A program made the position numbers and the translations under genes. This document shows positions 3,119 through 23,854 of a stretch of 64,000 nucleotides of DNA, piece after piece. The notes beneath the pieces were generated by a model. That model saw nothing but the letters and a program-made list of their open reading frames with translations. It had not been told where the DNA came from and did no database searches. Every line of letters begins with the position of its first letter. Positions within the stretch are counted from its first letter, which is position 1. The stretch spans positions 1 through 64,000 of IMG/VR virus record IMGVR_UViG_3300028676_000005; one strand, 5' to 3'.

Positions 3119-3263
3119 GTTTGAAATATTCTTGACTATCCAAATTCTATAGTCAAGAACCTTTAAACTGTACTACTGAATTTTGAAAGTGCGTGCTCGT
3201 CCCAGTTGTGGAGGACGCGAACGTCATTTCCTATATAATAGACTTCTACTGAGAACTTACTTA

Positions 3264-4358
3264 ATGATCACTTTGCCATTTCCAAAGCACAGGCTATCTC
3301 AGTATCCACTGAAACGTTTCCCAGGGCTTGGTAACCTGCACCGAGTCACAGCACATAATCAGAAAGCTTTTCGAGAGTATCTGGACCGATCGGTCATCAA
3401 CCTCAATGATGAACATTTCTTAGTACAGCTTTTACGACACCTTGCAATTGACCCAGAATGGGATCTGGCAGAAGTTATTGCCAACGCAAAGTTTCGTTCA
3501 TACTCATTATCAACTCTGTTTAATATCACTTCCATGAATGGAGTGGGTTCTGTTATTAAAGTGGGAATGTACGGTGAGGGCTGCAATGAACTGTGGAGCC
3601 TTATCGAACATGACCGTGTTTATGATGAAGCTAAGCTAGCCCAAGATCATTTAAGACCCATTATTCCGGTTTACACTAATATACTCACTCGTGGGTACAA
3701 ATTAATTGCAGAACGCAATCCGGACAGTGTGGTTAACAAGGATAAGATAGCTATTGTGGCTATTAACGTTGTGGAGCTGGCAATTGGCTGGTGGCTATGG
3801 ATGCGGGAAGACCGTACCCGTGACACAGGACCTGCTGCTTATCTTTGCATGTGGCCTCTGTACACAGCCCAGCTCATCCATAACCAAAGTGTAATGGTTA
3901 ACTCTTTATACGAGTTCTTTGTTAACGGAGTTAGCACAAAAGACTTGTTTGAGATGGAGACCGTTAAGTTTACCACTCTTAATGAGGCAAAGCTTATTAA
4001 GGAATGGTTTACGTTTAAGCTGGATATCTTGACCAGTACTCCATTATCGGATATTGGGCATTTGTTAGCTAACGTTGACAGCATCTACCCAACACCTTTC
4101 TTTAACTACGAGGATGGTGGGGACAACAAGATGTTTGTTCAGACTCGTTGGTTGTGGGATCAAAACGTTATTAAATGGTACAGCATTTACTTTGCTATTT
4201 TTAACGCTCTAGGAAAGCCTGTGGGCGACGTTAAGTCTGTTACCCAACGCGTACTACCCTTCGTGGTCGCGAGCTTCTCTAAGGCCCCTTCCAACTTATG
4301 TAGAGATAACTTCAAGGGAATAGCCCAGGAGCTGTCTCAGTTAGTTTCTAAAAACTAG
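3264..4358 (+). CDS. Conserved hypothetical protein of the chimallin/DNA polymerase block
   Basis: Long ORF (track 3183..4358; ATG at 3264 preferred) on the opposite strand between chmA and the polymerase. No recognisable motif. Confidence 0.75.
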   Translation: MITLPFPKHRLSQYPLKRFPGLGNLHRVTAHNQKAFREYLDRSVINLNDEHFLVQLLRHLAIDPEWDLAEVIANAKFRSYSLSTLFNITSMNGVGSVIKVGMYGEGCNELWSLIEHDRVYDEAKLAQDHLRPIIPVYTNILTRGYKLIAERNPDSVVNKDKIAIVAINVVELAIGWWLWMREDRTRDTGPAAYLCMWPLYTAQLIHNQSVMVNSLYEFFVNGVSTKDLFEMETVKFTTLNEAKLIKEWFTFKLDILTSTPLSDIGHLLANVDSIYPTPFFNYEDGGDNKMFVQTRWLWDQNVIKWYSIYFAIFNALGKPVGDVKSVTQRVLPFVVASFSKAPSNLCRDNFKGIAQELSQLVSKN

Positions 4359-10372: not shown

Positions 10373-10439
10373 GTGCCACTCTCTTCTACTGGGTTAAAAA
10401 AATCTTTAGAGAACTATTCTCTACTGTTATTACAAAGTA

Positions 10440-10448
10440 GTAATATAG
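10440..10448 (-). promoter_or_regulatory. Early promoter motif CTATATTAC upstream of phuZ
   Basis: Exact 9-mer repeated at four intergenic sites, all on the minus strand ahead of genes; contains the phiKZ early TATTAC core. Confidence 0.7.
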
Positions 10449-10496
10449 AGCCAAAAAGTTTTTGACTCCTATAATTAGTTGATACAGTTAAAATGC

Positions 10497-10543
10497 AAAA
10501 AAAAGCCTCGTTCTCAGAACCCGATTAAAGGTCTGAGACGAGG
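10497..10543 (-). terminator. Rho-independent terminator closing the RNA island
   Basis: CCTCGTCTCAGA...TCTGAGAACGAGG hairpin followed by T8 on the minus strand. Confidence 0.75.
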
Positions 10544-10544
10544 G

Positions 10545-10860
10545 TGGAGTATCAAACGGTTACAAACTCTTGTACTTAAACAAGAGGCAGGAATATAAAC
10601 ACCAGGCCTTTCGTTATGTGCCAGTATATTCGCGGTTCGCAATACCGGTGGTTCACAAAAGGTCTGGCGGGAAGTTTTCATTGGTCTTTTTACATCGACC
10701 AGCAACCAACAAGCCTTGGGAGGTACCCGTTGGTTGGCTACAAAGGACTTCCTAACCTCTACAGCAAGCGACAAACACCAGGCGAAAAGAGACGTCCAAC
10801 TGACATCTCCGCAAACAGTGAAGGATGGCACTGTTTACTTACACGGCCGCTAGACCATGT
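10545..10860 (-). ncRNA. Putative structured non-coding RNA domain (hairpin series)
   Basis: Consecutive hairpins on the minus strand: GTAAACAGTG/CACTGTTTGC, GAGATGTC/GACGTCTC, GTAGCCAAC/GTTGGTTGC, CTCTTGT/ACAAGAG. No credible ORF. Confidence 0.45.
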
Positions 10861-10956
10861 TGGGTGGAAGACTGGATGGATTCGAACCACCGACCAGCGA
10901 GGAGGGTAAATGATACCCGAGGACTCCCCGTTCTAACCAACTGAACTACAGTCTTC
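10861..10956 (-). ncRNA. tRNA-like RNA A with extended anticodon arm (22-nt 'loop' folding into GGGTA/TACCC with a TCATT tip)
   Basis: Acceptor AAGACTG/CAGTCTT plus G-1:C73. D arm GTTC-AGTTGGTTA-GAAC. T arm GGTGG-TTCGAAT-CCATC. 15 extra nt in the anticodon arm. 3' end CCACCCA. Confidence 0.75.
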
Positions 10957-10961
10957 ACATT

Positions 10962-11050
10962 TGGGGGAAAGGGCAGGACTTGAACCTACGACCTCCGAAC
11001 AAAGGCATGACCATTCGCACGGTGCTCTAACCAACTGAGCTACAGTTCCC
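10962..11050 (-). ncRNA. tRNA-like RNA B with extended anticodon arm (18-nt 'loop', TCATG tip)
   Basis: Acceptor GGAACTG/CCTTTCC (2 mismatches) plus G-1:C73 and encoded CCA. D arm GCTC-AGTTGGTTA-GAGC. T arm GTAGG-TTCAAGT-CCTGC. 11 extra nt in the anticodon arm. Confidence 0.75.
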
Positions 11051-11206
11051 ATAAATCTTGACTCGTTTACATGTGATTGGTTGTCACACGCATACTTTCT
11101 GAGGGCACGAGGCACCACCCATTTGGCGAACACACCAGTAACCCACCACAGGCCCCAACATGTCGTTTATCAGAAAGTTTCATCACCCATTGCTAGGTAA
11201 AGAAAA

Positions 11207-11282
11207 TGGCTCCGCGACCTGGACTCGAACCAGGGACCAACAGATTAACAGTCTGCTGCTCTACCAACTGAGCTATCGCGGA
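11207..11282 (-). tRNA. trnN: tRNA-Asn (GTT)
   Basis: Canonical 76-nt cloverleaf, loop CT-GTT-AA, perfect acceptor stem, G73-CCA. Confidence 0.97.
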
Positions 11283-11414
11283 ATGTAGCAGAAATCATTA
11301 GACATGTCTTAGGACTTTTACCCCACGTTTTTATCAAGGGCCGACTGCCTAGGCGCCCTGCGTGTTTTCTTTCTTTACCAGATTACCTTGATCACGGGGT
11401 CTGATAAAACAATG

Positions 11415-11490
11415 TGGCGGCGTAGCCAGGAGTCGAACCTGGAACCTTCGGTTTTGGAGACCGATGCTCTGCCAGTTGAGCTACTAGGCC
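11415..11490 (-). tRNA. trnW: tRNA-Trp (CCA)
   Basis: 76-nt cloverleaf, loop CT-CCA-AA, G73-CCA, C4.C69 mismatch. Confidence 0.95.
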
Positions 11491-11502
11491 TAATCTAAAT
11501 CT

Positions 11503-11586
11503 TGGGCGTCATTGGGTTCTTACCACGGGCCTTCAGCGGTGACCGACGACCAGGTCACACCCACGTTCTTCAGCCGAAGCAACGAC
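11503..11586 (-). ncRNA. ~80-nt stem-loop RNA with an acceptor-like terminus
   Basis: Closing stem GTCGTTG/CAATGAC followed by G-CCCA. Inner stems CTTCGGC/GCTGAAG and GTGACC/GGTCAC. G.U pairs form only on the minus strand. Confidence 0.5.
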
Positions 11587-11595
11587 TAAATCTTG

Positions 11596-11895
11596 AAATT
11601 GAATCCGTTAGCTATTATCAGGGTAGGAGACTGCCCGGTTACCAAGCCTGATAATAACTGAGTCACCTAGTCACGGAAAACAACGTAGGTAACTGCCAGG
11701 ACACCCCTGGCTGGTGTAACAGAGTTAATCCCCCGACTCCCATCTGTTACTTAACACGAACCACCAGCGTCATGGGTCAGTGTTAACATTTGAATTCAGG
11801 TAGGTCTACAGACTTTTACTGTACGTCATGAGTAACAGACCGGCCTCCAGATCTGTAACGGTTTTCTTCAGGGCGCAGGGCAGCGGCTAGAATAA
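11596..11895 (-). ncRNA. Putative structured ncRNA domain (large-loop hairpin series)
   Basis: Hairpins at 11611-11658, 11716-11750, ~11751-11796 and 11832-11859. No ORF. Confidence 0.5.
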
Positions 11896-12016
11896 GGTAG
11901 AGAGTGTGGGATTCGAACCCACGGGAGCAAGCTCACAGCCGGTTTCAAAGCCACCGCGCGGAAGACCGTACCGCAACTAATCCACCAGCCTCCTTCAACC
12001 ACTCGGACAACTCTCC
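11896..12016 (-). tRNA. tRNA-Ser(TGA)-like gene with a 35-nt insertion at position 31/32 or 32/33; no encoded CCA
   Basis: Acceptor GGAGAGT/ACTCTCT, Ser-type D arm TCCGAGTGGTTGAAGGA, anticodon stem GCTGG/CCGGC, long variable arm and T arm GTGGG-TTCGAAT-CCCAC. The 42-nt loop ends TTTGAAA. Confidence 0.7.
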
Positions 12017-12370
12017 AGAAACAAGATCCGTTCGCCATGACTGCAAGAAGGCGGATAACCGTCTACCAGCAATATGTTCTTACTTTCCCGTAGCCACGGA
12101 TAACAGCGGACCGAATACCCTGGAACAACATGAATGGGTACTGGATCAGCACGGGAAAGACCTCATGCGAGGTGGGTCGTCAAGGCTACTCTAGGAGTGC
12201 GTCGACTATCGAGCCAGCGACCAGGCCGGCTAATGAACGGGTCATCCCCGTTTATCCAGTTACAGGTGCCGTGAATGGGGACCTGTAACCAAATTTGTAT
12301 TAGAGTAGGGACATTATCCTTAGTCTCTTCGAAGGGCCCTCCGCAGATTGCACCCAAGACTGTATACTAA
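12017..12370 (-). ncRNA. Putative structured ncRNA domain
   Basis: Stems GTTACAGGT/ACCTGTAAC, AACGGG/CCCGTT, AGCCGGC/GCTGGCT, ACCTC/GAGGT and long-range CTTTCCCGT/ACGGGAAAG. Confidence 0.5.
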
Positions 12371-12378
12371 CCACCCAA

Positions 12379-12432
12379 TGTGTCGTGAGGGACTCGAACC
12401 CTACATGCCGCTATGGCGACAGAACCCAACCT
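12379..12432 (-). pseudogene. 3' half of a class II (Leu-like) tRNA
   Basis: Variable arm TGTCGC-CATA-GCGGCA, T arm AGGG-TTCGAGT-CCCT and acceptor 3' strand ACGACAC. No matching D arm or 5' acceptor strand upstream. Confidence 0.55.
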
Positions 12433-12484
12433 ACGCATTGATGATCTGACTTACCTGCCCGAGGAGACTAAGGTAAATCAAATA

Positions 12485-12561
12485 TGGCGCAACCAAGGGG
12501 ACTCGAACCCCTGACCACCCGCGTGACAGGCGGGTATTCTAACCAACTGAACTATGGGTGC
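12485..12561 (-). tRNA. trnD: tRNA-Asp (GTC)
   Basis: 77-nt cloverleaf, loop CT-GTC-AC, G73-CCA, C4.T69 mismatch. Confidence 0.96.
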
Positions 12562-12574
12562 TTTGTATAACATA
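12561..12574 (-). promoter_or_regulatory. Late-type promoter/leader TATGTTATACAAAG (copy 1, ending at G1 of tRNA-Asp)
   Basis: Exact 14-bp repeat of 13119-13132. Begins with TATG, the phiKZ nvRNAP late promoter core. Confidence 0.6.
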
Positions 12575-13119
12575 GTAAATCGGGACGAAGTCGATATGAG
12601 TTCTACTCTCATACTCTCTACAAGTGATCGAAGTCACTAGCAGTCTGGATCGCCCTTCATCATCGGCTTTTCATCCTTAAGCGCAGTAAACCCTGACGAC
12701 CGTTAGGCTAGAGGGAACCCACATTGCCCAGGTTTATCCAGATACCATGGAACCCATGGATTCTTTTTCAACACCGTCATATAACAGTGTCGAGTAATAA
12801 GTTAAGGAGAGGTCGCAGACGTGAACCACGGTCCTCTCCTGACCTTGAGACTATGATAAGGGCGGCGCCGCCGATATCACGTAACAAGCCGCCTCACTTT
12901 GTCAGTAGCCAGCCCGCGTGCTTTGCCGCAGAAGCGGCTCCCGCGAAACTGGTCTGTAGTAGACTTAGTGTGACTAAGAGTCTTGACGGGACTCCCATAG
13001 GGTTTTGATAAGAGCGCCTGTCACAGCTAACCCCGACCATCATAATTCATCCGGCACCACCCTTAAGGCTCCGAACAGTTTCCCCAAAGGGAAATTCCGC
13101 GAGATCATTTACTGGTCTC
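12575..13119 (-). ncRNA. Putative ~545-nt structured non-coding RNA
   Basis: No credible ORF. At least eight hairpins. Starts after the same 14-nt promoter/leader as tRNA-Asp. Confidence 0.55.
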
Positions 13120-13132
13120 TTTGTATAACATA
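13119..13132 (-). promoter_or_regulatory. Late-type promoter/leader TATGTTATACAAAG (copy 2)
   Basis: Exact repeat of 12561-12574 at the 5' edge of the RNA island. Confidence 0.6.
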
Positions 13133-13139
13133 ACAACTC

Positions 13140-20566: not shown

Positions 20567-23500
20567 TTATGCTGCTTTTTTCTTGTTCTGCACCATACGC
20601 TTAGCTCTTTCGAGTTTGGCGTTTTCAATCAACGTATCTACTGTCAACAGTTTAGCTGCATCTGGTGGAAGCAGTTTGCTAAGCTTGATGATCTCAGCTT
20701 CCAAACGAATAGCCAAAATGTTGTCAGGAGTTTTAAGCAACTCTTCTGTAAACGCGGCAATCTTGAGACGGATGTTCTCAAAGAACTTCAACATCGAAGG
20801 ATCTACAGGAGGTGCTTTCTTGTCCTTACCTACATCGAGGAGACTTTGGGTCTCAATAAGAGCAAGCGCTGACATGATGCCGTAAAACGGTTTGTTTGCC
20901 CCCAACTTGATAAACCAGTAGGTAAGCAACCAGGAGATAACCAAGTCATCGTGCTGTTTCGAATCGTGGTCAATGCGATCGCCCTTAGTCCTTAGGTTAA
21001 TCAATTCATCGGCCAGCTTATCGTAGTTAATCCCATACCCAGTAATGGCAACCGCTTCTTGAATAAGACCATACAGGACCTTACGCGAGTTAGCTGTTGT
21101 CACAAACCCAAACAGATGTTTAAGTTTCAGATAGAAGTTCTTATCACGATAAGCAAACTTGGTGTTTTGAACAATCTCCAATTCTTTCTGATGGTTAACA
21201 GGGTCTTGATAGACTTGGTTGTAGATCCGTGTGAACGGGTCCATTCCTTTACTTGGCAAGATAATCAGCAAACTGTCGATCATGTGGTGAGCATAGTTAC
21301 GCTCAATCACCAACACACTGTTCTGAATAACTTCCAAGAGGTCCACGATAACCGCTGTCACATCGTCCAGGAGAGCCAAAGCGTAACGACCCACACCAAC
21401 TACCGTACCTGTCTTCATCGACCGTATAACGACCGTACAGGCGTCCTTGTTGATAGCAGAAGAGGTATCCACCCCAATGATGAAGTGATCGTTGTGTTCC
21501 TTCTTACTCATTTCAGCAAGTTTTTCTTGAGTAACAAAGAAGTCCACAAACAATCCACTATTGCGATACTCTTTGCTCCAGACACGTTCTCGTTTAACGT
21601 TGTTAATTGCCTCACGAGTAATGTCGTCGAACAAACGACTCTCACCATCCTCAACCCACATTAACAACAAGTCGATCTTGGCCTTAGCCAAAGTCAATTT
21701 GAGATCGTCAATGGTGCGTTTTACCCAGTCCTTGTTCTTACCTAGTTGCAGGTAGTTGTAAATCATGGATACCGCAGGAGAAGTAGTACTCTCCGGAGAT
21801 GCCCTAATCAACCGATCCTTCAGATGGCTTTCGCTGAACGAATCAAAGAACTTCTCACGCCACTCGGTAGCAGACATGAGTTTCTTGAACATGAACTCGC
21901 CACTCGGGTGAAGAGTAGTGTTCGGGGTGGTGATGTAACCAATACCGTACGTGATGCCAGCTTCTCGACAGAGTTCCATTTCCGTCAGAGCAGAAGGCAT
22001 CGAACCGTTGATGATCGCCTCAATCCAAGGAATGTATCCAGGCTCATCGAGGAACGTTGTACCTACCGTAAGACCACGACCAACGTCACCAGCGGCATCT
22101 TTACCGATCTGTGGAACGTTAATCGTTAATACGTTTACCTTATCGTCACCAAAAGACCTGTACGTCAGCGAGGTACCAGCATCCTTGTCCTTATACGTCG
22201 GGTTAACGAGGTACGTGGGGATACAGCTTCGCATCCGTTTAACAGCATCAATGAACTGAGCCCTGTTATCACTTTTCAGGGTAATAACGTGAGTCTTGTA
22301 ACCACGCCCATTGATGTAAGTCAGCCAGAAGTTAATAACCTGAACAGACACTGTGTTGTGAGTAACAATGAAGTCATCCGTTACGTACAGATGTTCCTCG
22401 TTGTCAACCTCAATACAGGTGCATTCATCATGACCAGCGTAAGACGTCTTGGTAATGAACAAACGGTTTTCTACATCTGGTCTTGGTGCATCTTTAAATC
22501 GGAAGTAACCAACTTCGTCTGGAAGGGTGACAACTACCGAATCTTTAAAACCTTTAGCTGTACCGCCAAGACTACGCGCCAGGTATTGAACCTGGTTAAT
22601 CAGGACCGGTGTAAGCCCTTCACAGAGAACACCAGACTTCGTTACCTGACCTTGGTCAAGAAACGCCTGTAGCGCAGCTGTACGGTCTTTAATAGAGCCT
22701 TCCAGATAGTCCGTGGGAAGGCCAGCTTCTCGACGAATACTGAAATCTTTGTTATTACCCATTGTCAGGTAATACGCGTCACCTTCAACCACCAACCGCA
22801 AATGCTTTGGCATATTGGTAGCAATGAAGTTAACAGCCGTAGTCGACAGGTTAGCCAACTTAAGCTTACCACCTTGCTGCTCTTGAGCAAACAAAGTACC
22901 CATGATGTACGGGTCGGTAATGTGATTCTGGCAAGGACCGTCTTCAGGGGTAATTACTGGCAACTCAACCTTCACACCTTTCTTGATAAGGGTGATGATT
23001 TGTGCTGTGGTGTATTCATCCCAAACTGGCTCACCATTGATCTCGTTAGAGTGGTCACCAATGTTCCACAAATGCTCAGCACCAGCGTCAGTGCGACGTC
23101 CGTCAGAACACTCAATTGTGTAAAGACGTTTTTTACCTTGTGGGTGAATACCGATAACCGTTGTAGGTTTACCAAGCCGGTCAATAACCTCATCGCCAAT
23201 ACGAAGGTCTTTTATCTTGACCCAACGATCTTCAAGACGAATCGTGCCATTACCCGGCATGTAACGCTTGACGCGAACCTTAGAACTGTTACGCTGGAAC
23301 TTGCCTTGCTGACGAGGCATGATCATGTAAGAAGTAATGTGGTTCAGGTAGTTCCAGATAAAACTAATGTTACCCCGGTTTGCCTGAAAGAAACGGTCAG
23401 AACGAACCTTGCAGATCTCTCGTAGAAAATACCAGAAGTTAGTTCGGCATTCTTCCATGATCCACATGCGCTGATCGTTAGTCAGATCTTCCGCATATGG

Positions 23501-23854
23501 GTCCACACCTTTCAGCATTGGGTTGTTAAGTTGCAAACAGAAGAAGTAGTTCTTAATCCCCTGCCTTTTAAAAATCTCTGCCGTACGTAAGAAACTTTTG
23601 TTAGGGGTTTCCATATCCGGAACTGCCCGATAACGCATGAAGTCCTTAAGAAAACGTACAGTCTTAATGCTGTGCAAACTATCTTCGTTGAAGTGAGCCA
23701 TTAACAACTCATCTTCGGTACGTGCTTTCCAATCGACACGCAGTCTATCGTCGTCAATCAATTCCTTAGGAAGATTGTGTGTCCCCAGATAGTCGTACAT
23801 GCCCTTGGCCGATTCGAGTAATCTAGCGTACTCTACATTCGTGACCATGACCAA
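20567..23854 (-). CDS. terL: Terminase large subunit (intein-containing)
   Basis: Walker A MPRQQGK|T interrupted by an intein, Walker B TTFLDE, YITT coupling motif, nuclease IIGVDTS and HDDLVIS. About 780 aa after splicing. Confidence 0.93.
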   Translation of the reverse strand: MVMVTNVEYARLLESAKGMYDYLGTHNLPKELIDDDRLRVDWKARTEDELLMAHFNEDSLHSIKTVRFLKDFMRYRAVPDMETPNKSFLRTAEIFKRQGIKNYFFCLQLNNPMLKGVDPYAEDLTNDQRMWIMEECRTNFWYFLREICKVRSDRFFQANRGNISFIWNYLNHITSYMIMPRQQGKFQRNSSKVRVKRYMPGNGTIRLEDRWVKIKDLRIGDEVIDRLGKPTTVIGIHPQGKKRLYTIECSDGRRTDAGAEHLWNIGDHSNEINGEPVWDEYTTAQIITLIKKGVKVELPVITPEDGPCQNHITDPYIMGTLFAQEQQGGKLKLANLSTTAVNFIATNMPKHLRLVVEGDAYYLTMGNNKDFSIRREAGLPTDYLEGSIKDRTAALQAFLDQGQVTKSGVLCEGLTPVLINQVQYLARSLGGTAKGFKDSVVVTLPDEVGYFRFKDAPRPDVENRLFITKTSYAGHDECTCIEVDNEEHLYVTDDFIVTHNTVSVQVINFWLTYINGRGYKTHVITLKSDNRAQFIDAVKRMRSCIPTYLVNPTYKDKDAGTSLTYRSFGDDKVNVLTINVPQIGKDAAGDVGRGLTVGTTFLDEPGYIPWIEAIINGSMPSALTEMELCREAGITYGIGYITTPNTTLHPSGEFMFKKLMSATEWREKFFDSFSESHLKDRLIRASPESTTSPAVSMIYNYLQLGKNKDWVKRTIDDLKLTLAKAKIDLLLMWVEDGESRLFDDITREAINNVKRERVWSKEYRNSGLFVDFFVTQEKLAEMSKKEHNDHFIIGVDTSSAINKDACTVVIRSMKTGTVVGVGRYALALLDDVTAVIVDLLEVIQNSVLVIERNYAHHMIDSLLIILPSKGMDPFTRIYNQVYQDPVNHQKELEIVQNTKFAYRDKNFYLKLKHLFGFVTTANSRKVLYGLIQEAVAITGYGINYDKLADELINLRTKGDRIDHDSKQHDDLVISWLLTYWFIKLGANKPFYGIMSALALIETQSLLDVGKDKKAPPVDPSMLKFFENIRLKIAAFTEELLKTPDNILAIRLEAEIIKLSKLLPPDAAKLLTVDTLIENAKLERAKRMVQNKKKAA
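22355..23299 (-). mobile_element. Class 3 intein (315 aa) with a degenerate LAGLIDADG endonuclease
   Basis: Starts FQRNSSKV, block B AEHLW, block F CTCIEV, ends IVTHN before extein Thr. Eroded blocks DPYIMGTLFAQ and AALQAFLDQG. Confidence 0.88.

What the first reader, a model, noticed from the sequence alone, without database searches (positions are those of the whole stretch)
11896..12016. tRNA-Ser(UGA) interrupted by a 35-nt insertion on the 5' side of the anticodon
Seen in sequence: a full serine-type body. Removing 35 nt (GGATTAGTTGCGGTACGGTCTTCCGCGCGGTGGCT, or the register shifted by one) at 32/33 or 31/32 restores the loop T-T-TGA-A-A. The insert has its own hairpin GCGG/CCGC. The gene has A73 rather than the Ser G73 and no encoded CCA. 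Established knowledge: bacterial tRNA introns are normally large self-splicing introns, while short introns are archaeal/eukaryotic and need an endonuclease plus ligase; none is visible in this window. Inference: either a short protein-spliced intron in a phage tRNA or a third tRNA mimic with a masked anticodon.
Basis: partly seen in the sequence, partly recalled or inferred. Interest (0 to 1): 0.75.

Follow-up and report, generated by a model that had tools for sequence, protein, structure and literature searches.

The report
Anticodon-less serine-type tRNA mimic in phage
The "interrupted tRNA-Ser" is real and conserved in a clade of uncultured nucleus-forming jumbo phages, but the comparison shows a tRNA-shaped RNA whose anticodon loop is permanently built into a long rod, so it is most likely a non-decoding tRNA mimic and not a tRNA gene with a short intron.

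Summary
On the minus strand, 12016->11896, lies a class II (Ser-type) tRNA body with 35 extra nt between the anticodon-stem strands. It is identical in independent assemblies. Ten further phage lineages carry orthologs, all upstream of the PhuZ gene.

The intron reading is not supported:
- All 11 orthologs carry an insert (30-45 nt). No insert-less allele was found.
- Would-be position 33 is U in only 5 of 11. In at least 6 lineages no single excision gives a canonical loop.
- That position instead covaries with an insert nucleotide (U-A, A-U, G-C).
- The arm always folds into one rod of about 23-25 layers. It has a 7-bp base, a conserved G.A-rich internal loop that swallows the former anticodon, and a variable hairpin.
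- No conserved bulge-helix-bulge motif is present.
- The complete 229-kb genome has no EndA, RtcB, Rnl1/2 or RNase III.

It is not a pseudogene either. The body is 94-97% identical between relatives against 76-84% for the flanks. Ten of 23 pairs show compensatory changes.

Two neighbouring tRNA-like genes also have long, non-decoding anticodon arms. The best reading is a natural "tRNA scaffold" or mimic. Its function (decoy, protein-binding platform or processing signal) is inferred, not shown.

The parts
11896..12016 (-). Whole Ser-type tRNA-like gene: RNA positions 1-121, where RNA position p equals window coordinate 12017-p.
   Evidence: Covariance model R1 scores 123.8 bits and this is the only hit in the genome.
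12010..12016 (-). Acceptor stem, 5' strand (GGAGAGU). It pairs with 11899-11905 (ACUCUCU).
   Evidence: Pairs 2-71 to 6-67 are invariant in 11 of 11 orthologs. Pair 1-72 is A-U x9, G-C x1 and G.U x1.
11991..12007 (-). D arm: a 3-bp stem (UCC/GGA) and the loop GAGUGGUUGAA with G18G19. This is the same loop type as genuine phage tRNA-Ser(GCU) genes in relatives.
   Evidence: Pair 10-26 shows three Watson-Crick types.
11937..11990 (-). Remodelled anticodon arm, a rod of 54 nt. It has a 7-bp base (GGCUGGU/ACCGGCU), a 5x5 internal loop, and a helix of about 11 bp capped by UCUU.
   Evidence: MFE is -21.8 kcal/mol with z -2.5. The same architecture appears in every ortholog folded.
11949..11983 (-).
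   Evidence: It is unique in the genome. It is only 50-71% alike between close relatives, whereas the body is 94-97% alike.
11979..11983 (-). Internal loop, 5' strand (GGAUU). GG is kept in 10 of 11 orthologs.
11943..11948 (-). Former anticodon-loop residues UUGAAA (positions 33-38). They now form the 3' strand of the internal loop. NGA-R-R is kept, but position 33 is not.
   Evidence: Position 33 is U5/A4/C1/G1 and it pairs with insert nucleotide f6 (columns 38/80).
11923..11937 (-). Long variable arm (15 nt here, 12-45 nt in orthologs). This is the class II hallmark.
11906..11922 (-). T arm: GUGGG-UUCGAAU-CCCAC.
   Evidence: Four of five stem pairs show compensatory changes, and 100% of cells are paired.
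11896..11898 (-). Discriminator A73 plus CC. The next base is U, so the CCA is incomplete.
   Evidence: Among orthologs N73 is A5/G5/U1. N73-CC occurs in 7 of 11 and a full CCA in 3 of 11.
10867..10955 (-). Companion tRNA-like gene 1. Its anticodon arm is a stem, a 5x2 loop (UCCUY/UC) and a covarying 5-bp hairpin.
   Evidence: Rfam tRNA 44 bits with 26 nt inserted in the anticodon region. Orthologs are shown.
10965..11049 (-). Companion tRNA-like gene 2. It has a continuous anticodon stem of about 11 bp with a short (3-7 nt), variable loop, conserved acceptor mismatches and an encoded CCA.
   Evidence: Rfam tRNA 40 bits. Orthologs are shown.

Best explanation
The gene encodes a stable tRNA-shaped RNA derived from a class II (Ser-type) tRNA. 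Its 7-nt anticodon loop has been permanently converted into a rod of about 50 nt. The rod has three parts:
- the normal 5-bp anticodon stem, extended by 26.44 and 32.38;
- a conserved G.A-rich internal loop, 5'-GGAU(U)/(U)UGAA-3', which is a tandem sheared G.A flanked by U.U and G.A and which sequesters the former anticodon;
- a lineage-specific hairpin of 11-13 bp.

Shown here:
- the fold;
- its conservation with covariation in 11 phage lineages;
- the loss of U33;
- the absence of any splicing apparatus in the phage genome.

Inferred:
- It is transcribed with the neighbouring tRNAs and cut out by host RNase P and 3' trimming.
- Its incomplete CC end is completed by the host CCA enzyme. It then accumulates as engineered 'tRNA scaffold' fusions do in E. 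coli.
- It cannot decode.
- It works as a tRNA mimic. Either it titrates host factors that recognise the tRNA body, acceptor end or long variable arm (for example tRNA-targeting defence toxins), or it presents the rod and G.A loop to a protein partner.

Whether it is aminoacylated is open. The discriminator flips between A, G and U among close relatives.
For: 1. Eleven orthologs were recovered, always upstream of PhuZ. All have an insert of 30-45 nt, and none lacks one. Read-laying on four further runs also shows only insert-bearing forms.
2. Pair counts on the 11 sequences give 95.6% of cells paired and 10 of 23 pairs with changes on both sides. None of 500 shuffles reaches the observed covariation score, and slid controls collapse to 31-52% paired. 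The T stem has 4 of 5 compensatory pairs.
3. Position 33 is U5/A4/C1/G1. It forms U-A, A-U or G-C pairs with insert nucleotide f6.
4. No single excision gives U33 plus R37 in L010, L015, L016 or L018. The same holds for L031 and L030.
5. Every arm that was folded gives base stem, internal loop and hairpin.
6. Between window and L010 the body is 94% identical, the flanks 76-83% and the insert 50%.
7. One hairpin type is about 88% identical (22 of 25 nt) between phages whose PhuZ proteins are only 57% identical. The hairpin is therefore not junk.
8. The genome is rated 100% complete and has no RtcB, Rnl1, Rnl2, EndA or RNase III.
9. Two adjacent tRNA-like genes also have long, non-decoding anticodon arms.
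10. Literature: E. coli processes and stabilises tRNAs whose anticodon stem-loop is replaced by a hairpin insert (PMC3753655). Serine identity does not depend on the anticodon (PMC9976931).
Against: - There are no RNA data, so maturation, abundance and the absence of splicing are all inferred. The phage is an uncultured peat MAG, and no RNA run holds the element.
- NGA is kept in all 11 orthologs (UGA x8, AGA x3), and both are serine anticodons. That could reflect decoding constraint and not only the G.A motif.
- In 5 of 11 lineages, including the window, a clean excision would give a canonical loop with A36-A37-A38.
- The host could supply RtcB.
- The pair-count alignment was fitted to the model, which inflates the paired percentages somewhat.
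- The function (decoy or platform) has no direct support, and no partner protein was identified.
Confidence: 0.6

Rival explanations
1. It is a functional tRNA-Ser(UGA) gene with a short intron at 32/33. A protein endonuclease removes the intron and a ligase (phage or host, for example host RtcB) reseals the loop.
For: - In the window, L001 and L017, removing 33-35 nt restores U-U-UGA-A-A. In L013 and L029 it restores a loop with anticodon AGA.
- NGA is kept in 11 of 11 orthologs.
- ARAGORN in intron mode accepts the gene.
- A relaxed BHB-like arrangement can be drawn in the window and L001.
Against: - Position 33 is not U in 6 of 11 orthologs, and those lineages have no excision that gives a canonical loop. 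Their bodies are nevertheless just as conserved.
- Position 37 is G in L010, and position 38 is G in L015 and L029.
- The BHB-like drawing rests on three G.U pairs, occurs in only two close relatives, and would give a loop with G33. Permissive BHB hits also occur at a substantial rate in shuffled arms: 20 observed against about 9 per shuffled set.
- The genome has no EndA, RtcB, Rnl1 or Rnl2.
- No insert-less allele was found anywhere.
- Protein-spliced tRNA introns are not known in bacteria (established knowledge; PMC4090602 covers archaea and eukaryotes).
Confidence: 0.07
2. It is a decaying tRNA pseudogene. An old tRNA-Ser gene was disrupted by an insertion and has no remaining function.
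For: - The standard tRNA finders miss it.
- It has G1.U72, A73 and no full CCA.
- The insert and the variable arm change quickly.
Against: - The body is better conserved than the flanking DNA, at 94-97% against 76-84%.
- Compensatory changes are seen in the T, D and anticodon stems, 10 of 23 pairs in all.
- The element is retained in 11 lineages, down to 56% PhuZ identity.
- The rod length and the internal loop are conserved.
Confidence: 0.06
3. Its only role is punctuation. The tRNA-like fold recruits RNase P and 3' processing enzymes, which cut the long non-coding transcript of the 2.7-kb cluster into its tRNAs and spacer RNAs. The released tRNA-like RNA itself is a by-product.
For: - It sits in a 2.7-kb ORF-free cluster, all on one strand, with conserved spacers.
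- In L001 and L012 a stem-loop followed by a U-run lies just before PhuZ. This was read from the sequence and was not scanned with the terminator tool.
- The acceptor and T arms, which are the RNase P recognition module, are the best-conserved parts.
Against: - Punctuation does not explain the conservation of the D arm, of the long variable arm, of the rod length (30-35 nt inserts in 10 of 11) or of the G.A internal loop.
- It does not explain why one hairpin type is about 88% identical (22 of 25 nt) across deeply diverged phages.
- The canonical tRNAs nearby would already provide cleavage sites.
Confidence: 0.15
4. It is an assembly or chimera artefact that created the insert.
For: The genome is a metagenome-assembled sequence.
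Against: - The sequence is identical in independent assemblies.
- Several runs hold it.
- Diverged orthologs carry inserts at the same site.
Confidence: 0.01

Closest known systems
Engineered 'tRNA scaffold' RNAs (Ponchon and Dardel; PMC3753655)
   Same: The acceptor stem, T arm and D arm are kept, and the anticodon stem-loop is replaced by an inserted hairpin. In E. coli such chimeras are processed, modified and protected from nucleases.
   Different: The scaffold is an artificial tool built on class I tRNAs. The element here is natural, phage-encoded, built on a class II body, and has a conserved G.A internal loop at the graft point.
Archaeal and eukaryal protein-spliced tRNA introns (BHB motif, EndA/TSEN plus RtcB or Trl1)
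   Same: Both are short insertions (tens of nt) in the anticodon arm whose 5' part pairs with anticodon-loop residues.
   Different: Here there is no conserved bulge-helix-bulge, no EndA and no ligase. The site is 32/33 and not 37/38, and U33 is not preserved. The host is presumably bacterial, because the phage is PhuZ/chimallivirus-like.
Bacterial tRNA group I introns (for example cyanobacterial tRNA-Leu(UAA), Azoarcus tRNA-Ile)
   Same: Both interrupt the anticodon loop of a tRNA gene in the bacterial world.
   Different: Those introns are over 200 nt long and have a catalytic core. This insert is 30-45 nt, and no Rfam group I match was found.
Bacterial Y RNA-like YrlA, and other tRNA mimics (tmRNA tRNA-like domain, viral tRNA-like structures)
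   Same: Each combines a tRNA-like module with a long helix and has a non-decoding role. Some are phage-encoded.
   Different: In YrlA the RNA ends lie in the long helix and the RNA partners with Rsr (TROVE). Here the ends are at the acceptor stem, there is no TROVE gene, and the YrlA model scores only 20.7 bits against a cut-off of 69, at a neighbouring site.
tRNA-Sec
   Same: It is the best Rfam partial match. It shares a long variable arm and is a class II body recognised by SerRS.
   Different: The score is 22 bits against a cut-off of 47. The acceptor/T geometry is 7/5 and not 8/5, and there is no UCA loop.
Phage tRNAs with anticodon-loop changes that evade host anticodon nucleases (PMC10264068)
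   Same: Both are phage-encoded tRNA genes altered precisely in the anticodon loop. The same cluster carries Asn, Asp and Trp (plus Tyr in relatives).
   Different: Those remain decoding tRNAs with point changes. Here the loop is abolished.

Membership tests
Canonical elongator tRNA (Rfam RF00005) | Scores at or above the 29-bit gathering threshold of the tRNA model. | tested here: not met
   There is no RF00005 match at this site even at E<=10. Only tRNA-Sec matches, at 22.2 bits.
Canonical elongator tRNA (Rfam RF00005) | A 7-nt anticodon loop with U33 and a purine at position 37. | tested here: not met
   42 nt lie between the stem strands. Position 33 is U in only 5 of 11 orthologs.
Class II tRNA-like body | A 7-bp acceptor stem, a D arm with G18G19, a T arm with UUCGAAU, and a long variable arm. 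| tested here: met
   The model also picks up genuine phage tRNA-Ser(GCU) and tRNA-Tyr genes at 46-63 bits.
Serine identity (bacterial SerRS substrate) | G73, G1-C72/G2-C71 and a correctly oriented long variable arm (PMC9976931). | tested here: inconclusive
   G2-C71 and the long arm are present. However, 1-72 is A-U in 9 of 11, N73 is A5/G5/U1, and the arm length is 12-45 nt. Charging was not testable, and the complex prediction was not run by the tool.
Protein-spliced tRNA intron | A bulge-helix-bulge motif at the exon-intron junctions. | tested here: not met
   The folds give a symmetric internal loop. A permissive BHB scan found no conserved hit at a homologous place, with 20 hits observed against about 9 per shuffled set.
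Protein-spliced tRNA intron | A splicing endonuclease and an RNA ligase are available. | tested here: not met
   PF01974, PF01139, PF09511 and PF09414 are all absent from the complete phage genome. The host is unknown, so host enzymes could not be tested.
Protein-spliced tRNA intron | A spliced RNA product exists. | not testable with these tools
   No RNA run holds the element. The 'RNA?' runs are probably DNA, and they contain the insert.
Group I intron in tRNA | A catalytic core of about 200 nt or more (P3-P9). | tested here: not met
   The insert is 30-45 nt, and there is no Rfam intron match.
YrlA / Y RNA-like | An Rfam RF02553 match and a linked Rsr (TROVE) protein. | tested here: not met
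   The score is 20.7 bits against a cut-off of 69, at a different site. The genome has no TROVE gene.
Kink-turn | A 3-nt bulge followed by tandem sheared G.A/A.G, and an L7Ae-family binding protein. | tested here: not met
   The tandem G.A can be drawn, but the loop is symmetric (4x4 or 5x5) in most orthologs and has no 3-nt bulge. The genome has no L7Ae gene.

The most novel reading that the evidence does not exclude
A clade of nucleus-forming jumbo phages encodes a small arsenal of two to three families of anticodon-less tRNA mimics per genome. The Ser-type member keeps the acceptor end and the long variable arm, so host factors that read the tRNA body still bind it. Examples are tRNA-Ser-preferring MenT/AbiEii-type nucleotidyltransferase toxins (PMC11541572) and Schlafen-type tRNases (PMC13056530). 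Its rod cannot be cut or used in decoding, so it would act as a decoy or sponge against tRNA-directed immunity. The swappable hairpin would be a specificity or evasion module.
Probability: 0.2. Interest if true: 0.8.

Novelty: new variant of a known kind. Interest (0 to 1): 0.55.

Why it matters
tRNA mimics are known: tmRNA, Y-like RNAs, viral tRNA-like structures and engineered scaffolds.

I found no description of phage genes in which a complete class II tRNA body carries a conserved rod in place of the anticodon loop. I also found no description of several such genes sitting among genuine tRNAs in nucleus-forming jumbo phages (literature searches).

If these RNAs are stable and bind host tRNA-handling or tRNA-attacking proteins, they would add a new counter-defence principle to the current picture. 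In that picture, phage tRNAs replace or outwit cleaved host tRNAs.

The finding also has a practical side. ARAGORN in intron mode, and any reader who restores a loop by eye, will mis-annotate such genes as intron-containing or suppressor tRNAs. Here the same locus was read as Ser(UGA) or Phe(GAA), and a neighbouring gene was read as 'Stop(UUA)'.

Tried and rejected
1. Group I intron or a small ribozyme in the insert. Rfam gave nothing relevant at gathering score, and nothing at E<=10 over 10500-13000.
2. Homologs in cultured phages.
   - blastn of 11500-12480 against 50,697 phage records found no match.
   - Model R1 against whole records of EL, RisingSun, Miami, USC-1 and FishSpeaker gave only one 15-bit hit. 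It lies inside a CDS and was judged chance.
3. The JGI metagenome scan and two IMG/VR scans with exact motifs only re-found the same two contigs. Orthologs had to be reached through PhuZ homologs and their contigs.
4. RNA evidence. No RNA run holds the element. The 'RNA-Seq' wastewater runs behave like DNA, and their contig includes the insert.
5. SerRS-RNA complex prediction.
6. BHB motif. A permissive scan returns many hits in shuffled arms too, and nothing is conserved.
7. Insert as a repeated or mobile element. It is unique in the genome.
8. Kink-turn with an L7Ae partner, Ro/TROVE partner, or phage CCA-adding enzyme. All are absent.
9. A mini-ORF behind the AAGGAGG in the D and anticodon stems. 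The spacing is too short and it is not conserved. This was judged by inspection only.

Full report
**What the window is.** The window is the first 64 kb of a single 229,429-bp contig. CheckV rates it complete. It encodes PhuZ tubulin, a multisubunit RNA polymerase beta subunit and a divergent DNA polymerase. This makes it a nucleus-forming (chimallivirus-like) jumbo phage. Its nearest cultured relatives are Pseudomonas phage EL and Erwinia phage RisingSun, at about 50% amino-acid identity in RNAP beta. The DNA comes from peat metagenomes. There is no isolate and there are no RNA data.

**The observation.** The finding lies on the minus strand, 12016->11896. Read 5'->3', it has these parts:
- a 7-bp acceptor stem (G1.U72);
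- U8;
- a 3-bp D stem with a GAGUGGUUGAA loop;
- a 5-bp anticodon stem, GCUGG/CCGGC;
- a 15-nt variable arm;
- a canonical T arm;
- A73, then CC followed by U.

Forty-two nt lie between the anticodon-stem strands. Plain ARAGORN and the Rfam tRNA model do not call the gene. That illustrates how arbitrary the splice register is.

The 121 nt are identical in two other assemblies and are present in several runs. This excludes an assembly artefact.

**The fold.** The minimum-energy structure does not leave a large loop with a small internal hairpin. It makes one continuous rod:
- a 7-bp base, formed by the anticodon stem plus 26.44 and U32-A38;
- a symmetric internal loop, GGAUU/UUGAA;
- a helix of about 11 bp capped by UCUU.

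The arm alone folds at -21.8 kcal/mol with z = -2.5. The former anticodon U-G-A sits in the internal loop opposite G-G-A. There it can form U.U, G.A and A.G, that is, a tandem sheared G.A. This pairing is inferred from the sequence and has not been probed.

**Relatives.** Exact-motif scans of IMG/VR and JGI metagenomes returned only this phage and one relative. I therefore collected PhuZ homologs and fetched their contigs. In all of them, a non-coding cluster of roughly 1.6-2.7 kb holding tRNAs and tRNA-like genes lies just upstream of PhuZ.

A covariance model built from eight orthologs gave these results:
- one site in the phage's own genome, at 124 bits;
- eleven orthologs in total, at 76-133 bits, from phages whose PhuZ is 93% down to 56% identical to the window's;
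- genuine phage tRNA-Ser(GCU) and tRNA-Tyr genes at 46-63 bits. These share the same D-loop type, which supports the class II, Ser-type assignment of the body;
- nothing credible in five cultured relatives.

**Evidence against an intron.**
1. Every ortholog has an insert: 30-35 nt in ten of them and 45 nt in one. No insert-less allele appears in contigs or in read-laying on four further runs.
2. Position 33 is U in essentially all decoding tRNAs. Here it is U5/A4/C1/G1. In L010, L015, L016 and L018 no single excision produces a loop with U33 and a purine at 37. The same is true for L031 and L030. L010 also has G37. L015 and L029 have G38.
3. Position 33 covaries with the sixth nucleotide after the 5' stem strand, giving U-A x4, A-U x2 and G-C x1. 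The next pair covaries as well. These residues are therefore selected as part of a helix, not as a U-turn.
4. There is no conserved bulge-helix-bulge.
5. The genome lacks EndA, RtcB, Rnl1, Rnl2 and RNase III. This agrees with a published survey reporting that nucleus-forming jumbo phages are poor in RNA-repair genes (PMC7824862).

**Evidence against a pseudogene.**
- On the 11-sequence alignment, 95.6% of cells are paired.
- Ten of 23 pairs have changes on both sides, including 4 of 5 in the T stem.
- None of 500 shuffles reaches the observed covariation score, and slid controls fall to 31-52% paired. On the independent MAFFT alignment of eight sequences, none of 500 shuffles reached the observed score either.
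- Between window and L010 the body is 94% identical, the flanks 76-83% and the insert 50%.

The insert is not junk either:
- Its length and the proximal internal loop are conserved. GG is kept on the 5' strand in 10 of 11 orthologs, and N-G-A-R-R on the 3' strand in 11 of 11.
- The L010-type hairpin is about 88% identical (22 of 25 nt) in L030, whose PhuZ is only 57% identical.
- Close relatives (window, L001, L010) nevertheless carry different hairpins.
- Hairpins therefore come in discrete types that are either exchanged or selectively replaced.
- The variable arm also expands, from 15 nt to 33-45 nt, in several lineages.

**Context.** Two further genes in the same cluster are tRNA-like (Rfam tRNA 44 and 40 bits), at 10955->10867 and 11049->10965. 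Their anticodon arms are remodelled in other ways:
- one has a stem, a UCCUY/UC loop and a covarying hairpin;
- the other has a continuous stem of about 11 bp with a short (3-7 nt) loop that varies between orthologs.

The canonical tRNAs in the cluster are Asn(GUU), Trp(CCA) and Asp(GUC). Relatives add Tyr, Ser(GCU), Gln and Leu.

**How it most likely works.**
- Shown: it is a conserved tRNA-shaped RNA gene whose anticodon is locked in a rod.
- Inferred: RNase P and 3' trimming release it from the cluster transcript, and the CC end is completed by the host. It then accumulates like engineered tRNA-scaffold chimeras, which E. coli processes and protects (PMC3753655).
- It cannot decode.
- SerRS ignores the anticodon and reads the variable arm and acceptor (PMC9976931), so charging is conceivable. 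However, N73 flips between A, G and U, and 1-72 is A-U, so a fixed amino-acid identity is doubtful.

I therefore favour a mimic that engages proteins reading the tRNA body or the acceptor end, or that presents the G.A loop and rod to a partner. Body-reading, Ser-preferring toxins exist: MenT3 recognises the long variable loop and the CCA end (PMC11541572). tRNA-directed phage defences are widespread (PMC10264068, PMC13056530). The decoy idea remains a hypothesis.

**Verdict.** The feature is a new variant of a known kind (tRNA-like RNAs). It is moderately interesting, and its main uncertainty is function.

Noticed in passing
window 10867-10955 (-) and 10965-11049 (-); orthologs L012:267-360, L010:4401-4493, L001:2914-3001, L012:174-261, L013:5280-5366, L015:3288-3377, L017:3329-3416, L018:3295-3382, L019:3389-3480: There are two more families of tRNA-like genes with remodelled anticodon arms and no conserved anticodon. 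One has a UCCUY/UC internal loop. The other has a stem of about 11 bp with a short (3-7 nt), variable loop, conserved pyrimidine mismatches at 5-68/6-67 and an encoded CCA. ARAGORN in intron mode mislabels the first as a suppressor, 'tRNA-Stop(UUA)'.
   Followed up: partly
window 10373-13139 (-): About 2.7 kb between the 586-aa ORF and PhuZ has no ORF of 120 aa or more. The spacers between the tRNAs (for example 11500-11890 and 12020-12480) are 76-84% identical to L001 and L010 and are rich in hairpins. A T-arm-like fragment lies near 12385-12410. These spacers may encode further non-coding RNAs.
   Followed up: no
L010:3333-3357 versus L030:2285-2309: The inserted hairpin is about 88% identical (22 of 25 nt) between phages whose PhuZ proteins are 57% identical. 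The window and L001, which are close relatives of L010, carry a different hairpin. This suggests modular exchange or selective replacement of hairpin types.
   Followed up: partly
window 11207-11282, 11415-11490, 12485-12561 (-); L010, L017: The canonical tRNAs of the clade are mostly Asn(GUU), Asp(GUC) and Tyr(GUA), plus Trp, Gln, Leu(UAA) and Ser(GCU). From memory, the GUN-anticodon set matches the substrates of colicin E5-type anticodon nucleases. This would fit the idea that phage tRNAs counter tRNA-cleaving defences.
   Followed up: no
window 3806-3818 versus 11960-11972: The apex of the window's hairpin shares an exact 13-mer with the minus strand at 3806-3818. It is therefore complementary to the plus-strand ORF 3183-4358. 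The match is at chance level for this genome (E about 0.09).
   Followed up: no
L001:2204-2246, L013, L015, L016, L018, L029, L031: The variable arm of the Ser-like RNA grows from 15 nt (window, L010, L017) to 33-45 nt in other lineages, always as a hairpin.
   Followed up: partly
window 20567-23854 (-): A 1095-aa ORF matches the terminase large subunit only in its first ~190 residues. Beyond that it gives weaker matches to P-loop families (DnaC-like loader, primase). This is an unusually long terminase-like protein.
   Followed up: no
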